Source of the DNA: Salpingoeca rosetta
Lineage: Eukaryota; Protista; Choanoflagellata
Length of the DNA stretch: 64,000 nt
Direction: 5' to 3'
NCBI GenBank assembly: GCA_033442325.1
Contig: JAWQFM010000002.1
Location: 1,752,795-1,816,794, forward strand
This document shows positions 9,661 to 63,131 of the stretch, one piece after another (the first letter of the stretch is position 1; each line of letters begins with the position of its first letter). The position numbers and the translations under genes are program-made. Under the pieces are notes generated by a model. The model saw only the letters and a program-made list of their open reading frames with translations. It was not told the origin of the DNA and made no database searches.

Positions 9661-14904
<5,244 letters not shown>

Positions 14905-15208
14905 GGCGTCAGTGACCGTTCCCTTTTGCACTGCTCGCCTCCTCCGCTGTGGTGCCAGACACAACAATCAAACCAAAACAACAACAACAACACCCTCAGC
15001 AAGCGATGACGAAGTCAGTTGTGCCCGCCTTGTTGCCTTGCTTTTGCTTGTAACGCCTTCTTGCTGTCCTCTCACTCGCGCACACAACAAGCAAGGTTGT
15101 AGAAAGTTGTTGAAAATACACGCAATTTTCTACCCACACCAACAAGCCAACAAGGTCACATCACAAAGCACACACCGTCAGCCATCACACACAAGCAACA
15201 GCGCGAAG

Positions 15209-17632
15209 ATGAGCAAGTCCGTGACGGAGACCAGCAATGAGCTGACGGATGGGCTGGACATGGCAAGCCCGGAGCAGATTGTGCGCTTGCTGCGTCAGGC
15301 TGATGCGCAGATGTTCAGTGGGTGGCGCGAATTCCCAGGCATCAATGACACCTCCACTATCGACACCATGGCGGAGCTTGCTGAGGTCGCTTCCACCATC
15401 CTTGCCGCCTCACCGCACACCAAGCCCGCGCGGCGGACAGCAGCCAAGGGGCAGGGCTTCAAGCTGTCGGCGTCTGCAAACACCTCTGCCAAGGCCACGT
15501 CCCCGATGACGTGCGTGCACTCGCCGACTCTTGCTGCGTCCGTGTACGCGACATCAAGGGTCGTCATCACTGGCAGCGGCACGTCTGGTCGCATGGCCTT
15601 CTTCATCTGCCGCGCCTTCAATGAGATGATGCTGCGGTCCGGCCGCGCCCCTTGCTTTGAGTACCTGCATGCAGGAGAAGATCCGGCCCTGTTCGTGTCG
15701 CGGGAGGCTCCCGAGGACAACTGGCAGCTGGCGCAGCGCCGCCTGGCAGAGGTCATGTCCCGCTCCGAGCGCATCATGCTCGTCGGCATCACGTGCGGCC
15801 TCTCGGCCCCGTTTGTCGCCAGCCAGCTCGAGTATGCCATGGGCTTCCTCAACTCCAAGGTGCACGCCGTGGCCCTGCTCGGATTCAACCCCGTGGAGCG
15901 CGCACGCAACGCGCCCGTCGAGGGCTGGCACCGCACGGTCGCCGACGTCGTGCAGGAGATGGCACGGCGCAGGGCGGAGGGCGAGCCCTGCTTCATCCTC
16001 AACCCCGTCGTTGGACCAGAGGCCGTCACAGGGTCCACGCGCATGAAGGGCGGTTCGGCCACCAAGTTCCTGCTGGAGATTGTGTTTGAGCGGGCGTTTG
16101 TGGCCATGGCTGCCAACGTGGCGACACCTGGCCCGTCCACGCCGTCAACACCGGAAACCCGGCGCCGTGGCAGCCGCGACTGCAGGGCGGATCGGCGCAC
16201 GCACTCGCCATCGCCAGCCCGCGCAACAAGCGGCGCAGTCTCGTCATCATCACAGGAGACCGCTACCGTGGACTCGGCCACCGCAGCAACGACGACGCCG
16301 ACGACAGTACCAGCCGAGCCAGCAGCCACGGCAGCCACTGCACCAACGGCAGCCACGGCAGAACAAGGGTCCTCCAACAACCATCACACCCTGCAGAGCA
16401 TCCTGTTCCCGTTCCTGCGTCGCCACCACCAGCAGCACCATCACCGCCACCACCAGCGCCACCATCACCGCCGCACTGGCAGCGCCACATCGTCACCCGA
16501 CAGCCAACAGCAGCAGCAGCAGCAGTCGCAGCTGTGCGAGGGCGGGTGTCTTGGACGCGCCAGCATCAGCGCTCTCCTGATGAACTATGAGGCAGCGGTG
16601 CGCGCCACGTATCTTTCGCTTGTCGATATTGCCACTGTTGTTGCCATGGGAGCTGAGGCCCTGAGCAAGGGCGGGCACATCTACTACCTCGGCCGCAACT
16701 CATATGGCCTTGCCGCCGTGATTGACGCGAGCGAGTGCCAGCCCACGTACAATGCGCGCTTCGAGGATGTGCGTGCGTTCCTGTGTGGCGGGTATGCGAC
16801 GCTGCGCAACGTGCAGGGCGACCTGTCGTCCCACTCGCGTGACTTCCGCCTCGGTTGGTGCCACTTCGGCGAGGACATTGTGCCGACGCTGACTTCACAC
16901 GACCTCGTCGTTGTCGTGGATGGCGCGTACACGTGTGCAGACACGCCGGCGGCGATGGAGGACGAGAAGCTGCTGCCGTCCATCCTGACGGACGTCAAGG
17001 CCAAGGGCGCCGCGCTCGTTGCAGCCGTGGTCGGTGATGTGCAGTGCAAGGCCACCTCCCACCCGGTCTACGCATCATCGTCATCATCATCATCACCATC
17101 ATCATCGTCATCATCGCCTGTGGATGAGGTGTTACAGCAGGAGTTGTCGAGCCCACAGCGTTTTGATTTTGTTCTGCGCGTGGATCTGCAGCACGTGGCG
17201 TTTGATACGCTCCCCATCCCCGTGTTTGCTGAAATTGCGATGAAGCTCGTTCTAAACGCAATTACAACAGGCGCGTTTGTCCTCACGGGCAAAGTCATGA
17301 AGAACCGCATGATCGACCTGCAGGTACTTTCGTTTTGCGTGTGCGTGTGTGTGTGTTTGCGTGTGTGTATGTGTGTGTTTGCGTGTGTATGTGTGTGTGT
17401 GTGTGTTTGCGTGTGTGGGTGGGGGACTGAGCTTTCCTGAAGCAATCTACACCCGGTTCAACTGCGACCGTCTGTCACTCACGTCTGGTCGATGCCTCGT
17501 GGCGACAGGTGAGCAACAACAAGTTGTTCTTCCGCTCGCTGGGAATCATCCAGGAGTTTTCGGGCGTGAGCGAAACACACGCGCGCACCGCTCTCCTCCG
17601 CTCCATTTACGACTGCACAGACGTCTCAAAGG

Positions 17633-17701
<69 letters not shown>

Positions 17702-17988
17702 GGTACGAATCAATTGTGGCGTCACTGTTCATGGTCTTGTTTGCTCACGGGCGCCAATGTTACCATCGTCCACGTGCGTGTGTGCATGCGTTCATGTGTG
17801 GCCGTCAGGTGTGTGATGCGCCCATCAGCCAGCACATCCGCAGCGCCGTCGCTGCTGCCCAGGCCGCCCATCGCGTCGTCCCAACAGCGGTCGTTCTCGC
17901 GTCCCAGCCCGATCTCTCCCCAGACGCAGCGAGGAAGCTGCTGGCTGCACACCCCATTGTCGCACACGCCCTCAGCGAACTCAACTAG
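15209..17988 (+). CDS. GCKR: Glucokinase regulatory protein-like, double SIS domain (MurQ-related); exons 15209-17323, 17509-17634, 17809-17988
   Basis: VTETSNELT..LD.A....IVRLLRQADAQMF, GSGTSGRMAF, SREAPED, GITCGLSAPFVA, GFNPVERARN, LNPVVGPEAVTGSTRMKGGSATKFLLE, KLVLNAITTGAFVLTGKVMKNRMIDLQ|VSNNKLF all match the GKRP architecture. Confidence 0.9.
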
Positions 17989-18569
17989 GCATGTGAAGCA
18001 CTCTCTGTAGTTTTGTTTGTTTGTGTCTGTGTCTGTGTGTGTGTGTCTGTGTGTGTGTGTGTGTCTGTATTCGTGCGCAATTTCCAGAGTGAACCTCTTT
18101 TTCTCCTTGCGCGTGTCTGTATGTCTCTCTGTGCGCATGCTTCTCCCTGTGTGTGCTGTGTGATGGATTAGGGCTTTGCATCGAAACTACACTTTGATTG
18201 TCTGCCGACATCGGTTTGCGTTTGTGCACGTGCGGTTTTGGATGTGGGAATGAACAAACATGTCAAACATAGCCAAGACAAGCGATGCACGTATGAACAC
18301 TGTGGGAAGGAAGGAACGAAAGGAGGGGAGCGAATTGTCAGCGTGCAATGCAGCCACAGGATGTTCGATTAAACACACATGAAATGAATGGGGTGGGATT
18401 GAGAGCGGAAACAACGGACCAGTCCGCGCGAAGAAAAGCGAAAGCGCGAGCGAGGAGAGGGGAGGGGGGCAATGCAAGCCAAGAAGGAACGGAACTTACA
18501 GTGCAAGTTTATACACGCACAGGTGCATTGGTTCACAGTTACACAGACACACCTGCAAACAAACACCTA

Positions 18570-62634: not shown

Positions 62635-62682
62635 TGTGCGTGTGTACGTGTGTGTGTGTGCGTGTGTGTGTGTGTACGTGTG

Positions 62683-63131
62683 NNNNNNNNNNNNNNNNNN
62701 NNNNNNNNNNNNNNNNNNNNNNNNNNNNNNNNNNNNNNNNNNNNNNNNNNNNNNNNNNNNNNNNNNNNNNNNNNNNNNNNNNNNNNNNNNNNNNNNNNNN
62801 NNNNNNNNNNNNNNNNNNNNNNNNNNNNNNNNNNNNNNNNNNNNNNNNNNNNNNNNNNNNNNNNNNNNNNNNNNNNNNNNNNNNNNNNNNNNNNNNNNNN
62901 NNNNNNNNNNNNNNNNNNNNNNNNNNNNNNNNNNNNNNNNNNNNNNNNNNNNNNNNNNNNNNNNNNNNNNNNNNNNNNNNNNNNNNNNNNNNNNNNNNNN
63001 NNNNNNNNNNNNNNNNNNNNNNNNNNNNNNNNNNNNNNNNNNNNNNNNNNNNNNNNNNNNNNNNNNNNNNNNNNNNNNNNNNNNNNNNNNNNNNNNNNNN
63101 NNNNNNNNNNNNNNNNNNNNNNNNNNNNNNN
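62683..63131. other. Assembly gap (N)
   Basis: Run of about 449 N. Confidence 0.99.

What the first reader, a model, noticed from the sequence alone, without database searches (positions are those of the whole stretch)
15560..16800. GKRP-like protein keeps both MurQ etherase catalytic motifs: possible prey peptidoglycan recycling
Seen: SIS1 has GSGTSGR and REAPED (15701-15718); SIS2 has GHIYYLG..AVIDASECQPTY (~16721-16750). Known: bacterial MurQ (MurNAc-6-phosphate etherase) uses Glu83 in ILDASECPPTY and Glu114 in VEGAED. GKRP arose by duplication of a MurQ-like unit, and mammalian GKRP has the drifted motif MDGVECIHTF and acts as a sugar-phosphate-sensing glucokinase inhibitor. The SIS2 motif here is nearly the bacterial one. 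Inference: in a bacterivore this could be an active single-chain etherase converting prey MurNAc-6-P to GlcNAc-6-P, or a muramate sensor, representing the ancestral role of the vertebrate regulator.
Basis: partly seen in the sequence, partly recalled or inferred. Interest (0 to 1): 0.75.

Follow-up and report, generated by a model that had tools for sequence, protein, structure and literature searches.

The report
Choanoflagellate GKRP gene, likely muramate etherase
This is the already annotated Salpingoeca rosetta orthologue of animal glucokinase regulatory protein; it very probably still works as the ancestral enzyme that splits the bacterial cell-wall sugar MurNAc-6-phosphate, a role already published for non-mammalian members of this family.

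Summary
Its product is identical to the 806-aa NCBI protein 'glucokinase regulatory protein [Salpingoeca rosetta]'.

The interpretation, a single-chain MurNAc-6-P etherase that digests prey peptidoglycan, is well supported but not new. Veiga-da-Cunha et al. 2009, as cited in two papers I read, showed etherase activity for the Naegleria GKRP homologue and proposed digestion of bacterial walls. A 2026 preprint shows that lancelet and ancestral GKRPs are active etherases.

'Keeps both glutamates' is not a distinguishing feature: both are invariant in all 41 GKRP-family proteins I aligned, and human GKRP keeps them too.

What I add:
- The protein has the bacterial or active-enzyme residue at the second-domain positions where frog, rat and human GKRP have drifted.
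- The genome also encodes an intron-containing AnmK, a NAGK orthologue, NagA and NagB.
- No hexokinase-family gene, the vertebrate partner, was detected; only a bacterial-type glucokinase.
- A second, many-exon GKRP paralogue lies on another contig.

The scan's first readers flagged this gene twice on this genome, and flagged AnmK separately. Low novelty.

The parts
15132..15208 (+). 5' untranslated region. The transcript contigs start at 15132 and 15136. The long upstream 'ORF' from 14687 is not transcribed with the gene.
   Evidence: table 8 (X4 record 2, X5 record 7); sequence shows no ATG between 15132 and 15209
15209..17323 (+). Exon 1 (705 aa): N-terminal helices, SIS-1, a low-complexity linker insert, and SIS-2
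   Evidence: tiles P0001 residues 1-705; Pfam; continuous RNA contig 15136-17067
15572..15592 (+). GSGTSGR phosphate-binding loop of SIS-1 (matches human Gly107/Thr109/Ser110)
15701..15718 (+). REAPED motif. Glu166 is the equivalent of E. coli MurQ Glu114 and human GKRP Glu153.
   Evidence: invariant in alignment A1
16106..16558 (+). Low-complexity insert (about aa 300-450; Thr/Ala/Pro-, His- and Gln-rich) between SIS-1 and SIS-2. It is kept in the mRNA, and most of it is modelled with low confidence (pLDDT under 50 at aa 315-393 and 409-427).
   Evidence: no joint, continuous contig; pLDDT values; internal short tandem repeats
16724..16750 (+). DASECQPTY motif of SIS-2. Glu509 is the equivalent of MurQ Glu83 and human GKRP Glu348. 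Ser508 and Pro512 are in the bacterial state.
17324..17508 (+). Intron 1 (185 nt, GT..AG, GT-repeat rich)
   Evidence: RNA depth is 0 in bin 17392-17495, and spliced contigs join 17320 to 17506, with a 3-nt CAG ambiguity
17509..17634 (+). Exon 2 (42 aa): start of the lid domain, with VSNNKLF. Lys710 (17521-17523) is the equivalent of human Lys514.
17635..17808 (+). Intron 2 (174 nt). It starts with a perfect (GT)33 and ends in AG. It is in frame and has no stop, which is why a mechanical ORF reads through it.
   Evidence: RNA depth 0.1-0.5 against 10-36 in the flanking exons, and a spliced contig
17809..17988 (+). Exon 3 (59 aa plus the TAG stop): C-terminal part of the lid domain

Best explanation
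The gene encodes a cytosolic, single-chain N-acetylmuramate-6-phosphate etherase of the GKRP type, and it is the choanoflagellate orthologue of animal GKRP. Two MurQ-like halves have degenerated in complementary ways. SIS-1 keeps the GTSGR phosphate loop, the Ser/Thr-Arg-Met-Lys strand and the Glu114-equivalent (Glu166). SIS-2 keeps the Glu83-equivalent (Glu509, in DASEC) and the helix leading into the lid (Lys710). Together they rebuild one of the two active sites of a MurQ homodimer. Inferred pathway: bacterial wall fragments from food vacuoles reach the cytosol as anhMurNAc or MurNAc derivatives and are phosphorylated at O6 by the genome's AnmK, and possibly by its NAGK. This protein then removes D-lactate to give GlcNAc-6-P, and NagA and NagB carry that on to fructose-6-P. 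Shown here: gene structure, expression, family, fold, conserved site residues, and the presence of the pathway genes. Inferred: catalysis by this protein, substrate flux from prey, and transport out of the vacuole.
For: Gene model and identity with NCBI protein P0001.

Transcription and splicing.

Domain architecture. The predicted model has pTM 0.82 and matches GKRP crystal structures at TM 0.83-0.86 and MurQ at TM 0.64-0.75.

Both halves align to E. coli MurQ, at E 7.6e-10 and 6.8e-19, with complementary motif loss.

Glu166, Glu169, Asp170, Arg278, Lys280, Asp506, Ser508, Glu509 and Thr513 are invariant across 41 family members, bacterial ones included.

The equivalents of the site residues listed for human GKRP (PMC4109836) are conserved or conservatively replaced, apart from Pro512 in place of His351. 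At the SIS-2 positions where frog (weak etherase) and human (its rat orthologue has no detectable activity) have drifted, Ala507, Ser508 and Pro512 are in the state seen in E. coli MurQ and lancelet.

Published activity: the Naegleria homologue, lancelet GKRP and resurrected ancestors are etherases.

Genome context: AnmK in 3 exons, equal to P0121, Pfam 2e-102; an NAGK orthologue exon, 3e-26 to human NAGK; NagA; NagB; no Hexokinase_1 or Hexokinase_2 hit, but a bacterial-type glucokinase.
Against: No enzymatic data exist for this protein.

The scores against the single-domain MurQ models are below NCBIfam's curated cut-offs (102 vs 302 bits; 135 vs 168). This is expected for a two-half protein, but it means there is no equivalog-level call.

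Six-frame searches found no GH22, GH23/SLT or GH25 lysozyme and no Amidase_2, so how muramic acid is released from prey walls here is unexplained. The GH22 control rang nowhere, so that null result is uninformative.

anhMurNAc is only a minor part of intact peptidoglycan.

Frog GKRP shows that conserved glutamates can coexist with very low activity.

The protein carries three species-specific inserts of unknown effect.
Confidence: 0.72

Rival explanations
1. The protein binds phosphorylated sugars, including MurNAc-6-P, but has little or no turnover. It would act as a sensor or regulator of some partner protein, reporting the presence or digestion of bacteria.
For: The GKRP site is an ambiguous sugar-phosphate binding site in non-regulated GKRPs. 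Frog GKRP keeps both glutamates with activity reduced by orders of magnitude. The large disordered inserts could be interaction regions. S. rosetta life history is known to respond to bacterial cues (my own knowledge, not tested here).
Against: Every catalytic-site position that drifted in the weak or inactive vertebrate proteins is in the bacterial state here. A dedicated upstream kinase and the downstream NagA and NagB are present, which fits a metabolic route. No partner is known.
Confidence: 0.15
2. It is a true glucokinase regulatory protein that inhibits the cell's glucose-phosphorylating enzyme, as its database name says.
For: The NCBI name. The best solved-structure matches are vertebrate GKRPs. 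The tree places it in the eukaryotic clade that holds the animal GKRPs.
Against: [quoted passage not shown] No hexokinase-family domain was detected in this genome, only a bacterial-type glucokinase.
Confidence: 0.03
3. The gene is a decaying relic, and the many-exon paralogue on contig C31 carries the real function.
For: A second paralogue exists. This copy has accumulated low-complexity inserts.
Against: The reading frame is intact and the gene is correctly spliced and transcribed. Close relatives at 54-66% identity keep the same core. All family-invariant residues are present.
Confidence: 0.05

Closest known systems
Non-vertebrate GKRP-type etherases: the Naegleria gruberi GKRP homologue (Veiga-da-Cunha et al. 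2009, Biochem J 423:323, read only through citing papers) and lancelet GKRP (bioRxiv 10.64898/2026.05.08.723886)
   Same: Same three-domain architecture (SIS-1, SIS-2, lid), same conserved site residues, and the same proposed role in digesting bacterial cell walls. About 38% identity to Branchiostoma GKRP (P0058) across the alignment.
   Different: This protein has not been assayed. It carries three species-specific inserts modelled with low confidence (aa 77-104; about aa 300-450; a poly-Ser stretch near aa 620-636). It belongs to a choanoflagellate that also has a second paralogue.
Vertebrate glucokinase regulatory protein (human 4BB9/4LY9, rat 4LC9, Xenopus 3W0L)
   Same: Orthologous clade, same fold (TM 0.83-0.86), and the same composite sugar-phosphate site with both glutamates.
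   Different: The SIS-2 motif is DASECQPTY here, against MDAVECVPTY in frog and MDGVECIHTF in human. No hexokinase-family partner was detected in this genome. GCK inhibition and sugar-phosphate allostery are reported as later vertebrate and mammalian innovations.
Bacterial MurQ (E. coli b2428; H. influenzae 4LZJ; Yersinia 4S12)
   Same: Each half is homologous to MurQ. The Glu83 and Glu114 equivalents, the GTSGR loop, the S/T-R-M-K strand and the N.KL lid lysine are kept.
   Different: MurQ is a homodimer of about 300-aa chains with two sites. Here one chain of 806 aa has a single composite site, each half having lost the complementary motifs. It scores below the MurQ equivalog cut-offs.
Bacterial GKRP-like proteins of about 570-630 aa (Sumerlaeota and Phycisphaerae in my hits; Bacteroidetes GKRP-like in my recollection of the 2009 paper)
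   Same: Same fused architecture, 37-43% identity. They are the sister groups of the eukaryotic clade.
   Different: They are prokaryotic and intronless, and lack the low-complexity inserts.

Membership tests
GKRP family (fused double-SIS plus lid) | Pfam architecture GKRP_SIS_N + GKRP_SIS_2 + GKRP-like_C, each above its gathering score | tested here: met
   119.9, 65.1 and 76 bits against cut-offs of 27, 27 and 27.7
GKRP family (fused double-SIS plus lid) | Full-length fold match to solved GKRP structures | tested here: met
   The model (pLDDT 81.5, pTM 0.82) matches 3W0L, 4BB9 and 4LC9 at target-normalised TM 0.83-0.86.
GKRP family (fused double-SIS plus lid) | Falls in the eukaryotic clade that contains animal GKRP (orthology) | tested here: met
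   Quick maximum-likelihood tree: the eukaryote clade has 99% support; the sub-clade holding the animal GKRPs plus Capsaspora, Monosiga and this protein has 88%; a separate Sycon-type clade has 100%. The tree is quick and rooted on bacteria, so support is moderate.
MurNAc-6-P etherase (EC 4.2.1.126, MurQ-like chemistry) | Acid/base glutamates equivalent to E. coli MurQ Glu83 and Glu114 | tested here: met
   Glu509 and Glu166. Both are invariant in 41 family members.
MurNAc-6-P etherase (EC 4.2.1.126, MurQ-like chemistry) | Both glutamates and the phosphate loop converge on one site | tested here: inconclusive
   This is shown for the homologous residues in human GKRP 4BB9 (PMC4109836), and the model superposes on that structure. 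The tools give no model coordinates, so I could not measure the distance in this model.
MurNAc-6-P etherase (EC 4.2.1.126, MurQ-like chemistry) | Scores above NCBIfam MurQ equivalog/subfamily cut-offs | tested here: not met
   TIGR00274 scores 102 bits against a cut-off of 302, and NF003915 134.6 against 168. So it is not a canonical single-domain MurQ. This does not bear on GKRP-type etherases, which have no NCBIfam model of their own among these hits.
MurNAc-6-P etherase (EC 4.2.1.126, MurQ-like chemistry) | Catalytic release of D-lactate from MurNAc-6-P | not testable with these tools
   Needs an enzyme assay. Published for relatives only.
MurNAc-6-P etherase (EC 4.2.1.126, MurQ-like chemistry) | Pathway context: a kinase that makes MurNAc-6-P and enzymes that consume GlcNAc-6-P in the same genome | tested here: met
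   AnmK on C11:629844-631736, equal to P0121; an NAGK-like exon on C6; NagA on C11; NagB on C26.
Vertebrate-type glucokinase inhibitor | A hexokinase-family glucokinase partner in the genome | tested here: not met
   No candidate at all for PF00349 or PF03727 in the six-frame search. The bacterial-type glucokinase PF02685 is present. Caveat: the search works exon by exon and does not prove absence.
Vertebrate-type glucokinase inhibitor | The jawed-vertebrate six-residue GCK-binding loop insertion | tested here: inconclusive
   A scan of alignment A1 for insert columns specific to fish found none. The paper calls this region highly variable and gives no coordinates in the text I could read.

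The most novel reading that the evidence does not exclude
S. rosetta, one of the closest living relatives of animals, runs a complete cytosolic, bacterial-style muramic-acid salvage route. The route would be a horizontally acquired AnmK and/or NAGK, then the GKRP-A etherase (plus a GKRP-B paralogue), then NagA and NagB, in a cell with no hexokinase-family enzyme. The GKRP site would then double as a MurNAc-6-P sensor linking bacterial digestion to cell behaviour. That would make this organism the tractable model for the pre-regulatory function of GKRP.
Probability: 0.12. Interest if true: 0.5.

Novelty: already known. Interest (0 to 1): 0.18.

Why it matters
It mainly corrects a database name. 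'Glucokinase regulatory protein' in a choanoflagellate should be read as a GKRP-type MurNAc-6-P etherase.

If confirmed at the bench, S. rosetta, which can be genetically manipulated, would let one test the physiological role of the ancestral GKRP activity in a close relative of animals. It would also show how a bacterivore turns muramic acid into fructose-6-P. The co-occurrence of AnmK, NAGK, NagA and NagB, together with the apparent lack of a hexokinase, gives concrete knock-out targets. None of this changes current understanding of the family.

Tried and rejected
- The 917-aa mechanical ORF from 14687 is rejected. Transcripts start near 15132, and the ORF's end reads into intron 1.
- The low-complexity linker is not an unrecognised intron: a continuous RNA contig covers it and no joint is seen.
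- The 'goes back 244' joint and the C>A at 16298 come from very deep foreign contigs that share only 20-23-nt low-complexity words with 16284-16306 and 16508-16527. I treat them as cross-mapping, not as a variant of this gene.
- The search for the vertebrate GCK-binding loop as fish-specific insert columns found nothing.
- Six-frame searches for lysozyme or lytic transglycosylase families (SLT, GH25, GH22) and Amidase_2 found nothing. The SLT null result fits a paper stating that choanoflagellates lack g-type lysozymes (PMC11576321, abstract).
- The 2009 Biochem J paper (PubMed 19671048) is not held, so I cite it only through the papers that cite it.
- No held paper links choanoflagellates with 'etherase'. 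A literature search on hexokinase in choanoflagellates was uninformative.
- The GC dip at 62-64 kb is an assembly gap of N.
The exons were searched separately by reference. Full-length analyses used the database protein P0001, which the three exon translations tile exactly.
- The large representative-protein search was not used, because the family was already clear.

Full report
**What is there**

The window is GC-rich eukaryotic DNA (53-61% GC outside the gap) with (GT)n/(CA)n microsatellites in introns and spacers.
- Exon by exon, the coding region is 15209-17323 (705 aa), 17509-17634 (42 aa) and 17809-17985 (59 aa), followed by a TAG stop.
- The introns are 17324-17508 and 17635-17808, both GT..AG. 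The second opens with a perfect (GT)33.
- The three exon translations tile, without gap or mismatch, residues 1-705, 706-747 and 748-806 of the database protein P0001, 'glucokinase regulatory protein [Salpingoeca rosetta]'.
They were searched separately by reference, and full-length analyses used P0001.

**Expression**

- Stranded raw RNA reads from two runs cover the exons in the orientation expected of a + strand RNA in most stranded libraries. Depth drops to 0 and to 0.1-0.5 in the two introns.
- Assembled transcript contigs from two further runs join 17120-17320, 17506-17626 and 17807-18007.
- Other contigs run unbroken from 15132 or 15136 to 17067.
- So both introns are removed, the low-complexity linker is kept in the mRNA, and the transcript starts about 75 nt before the ATG. 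The 917-aa mechanical ORF from 14687 is an artefact.

**Checking the observation**

- E. coli K-12 MurQ, taken from the annotated genome, has Glu83 in ILDASECPPTY and Glu114 in AVEGAED.
- Human GKRP has MDGVECIHTF and Xenopus MDAVECVPTY at the aligned place.

**Family**

- Pfam finds GKRP_SIS_N, GKRP_SIS_2 and GKRP-like_C, all far above their cut-offs.
- The best solved relatives are Xenopus (3e-76) and human (1.5e-70) GKRP. MurQ follows at 6e-16.
- The NCBIfam MurQ models match, but below their curated cut-offs.
- An AlphaFold model built on a 41-sequence alignment has pTM 0.82. Low confidence (pLDDT under 50) is confined to three segments: aa 77-104, 315-393 and 409-427.
- The model matches GKRP crystal structures at TM 0.83-0.86, and MurQ over one half at TM 0.64-0.75.

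**How the two halves relate to MurQ**

E. coli MurQ aligns to residues 110-292 (E 7.6e-10) and to residues 471-741 (E 6.8e-19).
- The first half keeps GxGTSGR, the Glu114-equivalent Glu166 and GSTRMKGGS, but has lost DASEC.
- The second half keeps DASEC (Glu509) and the helix and lid (K..LN...TG....GKV..N.M.D....N.KL). It has lost the P-loop (GRNSYG), the EGAED motif (VQGD) and the SRMK strand.

This is the known 'duplication and unequal fusion' that leaves one composite site.

**Is 'both glutamates kept' informative?**

No. In the alignment of 41 GKRP-family proteins (choanoflagellates, Capsaspora, sponge, cnidarian, echinoderms, molluscs, lancelets, lamprey, fishes and several bacterial phyla), Glu166, Glu169, Asp170, Arg278, Lys280, Asp506, Ser508, Glu509 and Thr513 are invariant. 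Human GKRP also keeps both glutamates (Glu153, Glu348), and both line its fructose-phosphate site together with the P-loop, the GLS strand, Ser258/Arg259 and the lid residues Asn512, Lys514, Leu515 and Arg518 (PMC4109836).

The equivalents of those listed site residues are conserved or conservatively replaced here (for example Thr195 and Cys196 for Ser179 and Val180, Thr277 for Ser258). The exception is Pro512 in place of human His351.

What does separate this protein from the weak and inactive vertebrate forms are the neighbours of Glu509:

| Protein | SIS-2 motif | Reported etherase activity |
|---|---|---|
| S. rosetta (this gene) | DASECQP | not assayed |
| E. coli MurQ | DASECPP | strong |
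| Lancelet GKRP (motif read in B. lanceolatum P0058) | DASECVP | active |
| Frog GKRP | DAVECVP | orders of magnitude weaker |
| Human GKRP (activity reported for the rat orthologue) | DGVECIH | rat: none detectable, or traces |

. This favours real catalytic competence.

**Literature**

The 2026 preprint by Santiago et al. cites Veiga-da-Cunha et al. 2009. It states that the Naegleria homologue has etherase activity comparable to bacterial enzymes and probably serves digestion of bacterial walls. It also reports that lancelet GKRP and the resurrected chordate, vertebrate and gnathostome ancestors are active, that rat is not, and that a duplication before Holozoa left protist paralogues.

Butenko et al. 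2020 has a section, 'Digestion of bacterial cell walls', built on the same enzyme in free-living protists. The companion preprint places GCK inhibition at the origin of jawed vertebrates, through a six-residue loop insertion.

I found no held paper that applies it to choanoflagellates by name.

**Genome context (G000, 55.4 Mb; the window is on contig C2)**

- An AnmK gene in three exons on C11 covers the whole Pfam profile. It equals NCBI's 'anhydro-N-acetylmuramic acid kinase [Salpingoeca rosetta]' (P0121, 2e-102). Its nearest kin are bacterial at 57-59% identity, plus one eukaryotic transcriptome protein, so a horizontally acquired and 'eukaryotised' gene is likely.
- One exon on C6 is clearly an orthologue of human NAGK (3e-26), with a weaker match to a MurNAc/GlcNAc kinase.
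- NagA and NagB are present.
- Neither hexokinase domain gave a single candidate, while a bacterial-type glucokinase is present. The method does find short-exon genes, such as the paralogue below, but it cannot prove absence.
- No SLT, GH25, GH22 or Amidase_2 was found, so the wall-cleaving steps remain unidentified.

**Paralogy**

A second GKRP gene of at least 13 short exons lies at C31:695616-701670. Its exons are most like a separate, well-supported clade: Sycon 'GKRP-like' plus two eukaryotic transcriptome proteins, at 50-57% identity over 278-427 aa. They resemble the window's clade less (44-53% over 141-268 aa).

In the tree, the window protein groups with two close relatives (100% support) inside a Monosiga/Capsaspora assemblage. 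That assemblage lies in the clade that holds the animal GKRPs (88%); the eukaryotes as a whole have 99% support.

**Verdict**

The most likely function is a GKRP-type MurNAc-6-P etherase feeding prey muramic acid into amino-sugar catabolism. I put the full statement at about 0.7, and higher for bare catalytic competence. Remaining uncertainty is biochemical and not resolvable with these tools.

Noticed in passing
G000:C31:695616-701670 (loci L004, L006, L007): A second GKRP paralogue, split into at least 13 short exons by (GT)n-rich introns. It carries SGCGTSGR, ELPEDD, GLSAPY, SSRMKGGSATK and a DASEMVDTYG motif. It is closest to a separate clade that includes a Sycon (sponge) 'GKRP-like' protein. 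That suggests this paralogue was not lost before animals diverged, unlike what the 2026 preprint sketches.
   Followed up: partly
G000:C11:629844-631736 (loci L008-L010): An intron-containing AnmK (anhydro-MurNAc kinase), identical in its exons to NCBI protein P0121. Its nearest relatives are bacterial (Latescibacterota, Handelsmanbacteria). A 2026 tick preprint says anmK is 'normally absent in Eukaryota'; this is a counter-example, and it is paired with an etherase.
   Followed up: partly
G000, whole genome: No Hexokinase_1 or Hexokinase_2 domain was detected in six frames. A bacterial-type glucokinase (PF02685) lies at C27:878765-879527. S. rosetta may phosphorylate glucose with a bacterial-type enzyme only.
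   Followed up: partly
window 15000-15136: RNA of the opposite orientation ends near 15081, and the GKRP transcript starts near 15132. The upstream minus-strand gene (an ankyrin-repeat ORF around 14266-14967) and this gene therefore appear to share a divergent promoter of about 50 bp.
   Followed up: no
window 16284-16306 and 16508-16527: Very deep foreign contigs (depth 185-747) and many reads share only 20-23-nt low-complexity words with these places. This produces an apparent C>A at 16298 and a 'goes back 244' joint, probably cross-mapping from another highly expressed transcript.
   Followed up: no
window 17635-17808: Intron 2 is 174 nt long, in frame and free of stops, and begins with (GT)33. 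If retained, it would add a Val/Cys-repeat stretch. The reads show only trace retention.
   Followed up: partly
window about 62650-63100: The GC dip in the last 2 kb is an assembly gap (a run of N), not a compositional feature.
   Followed up: yes
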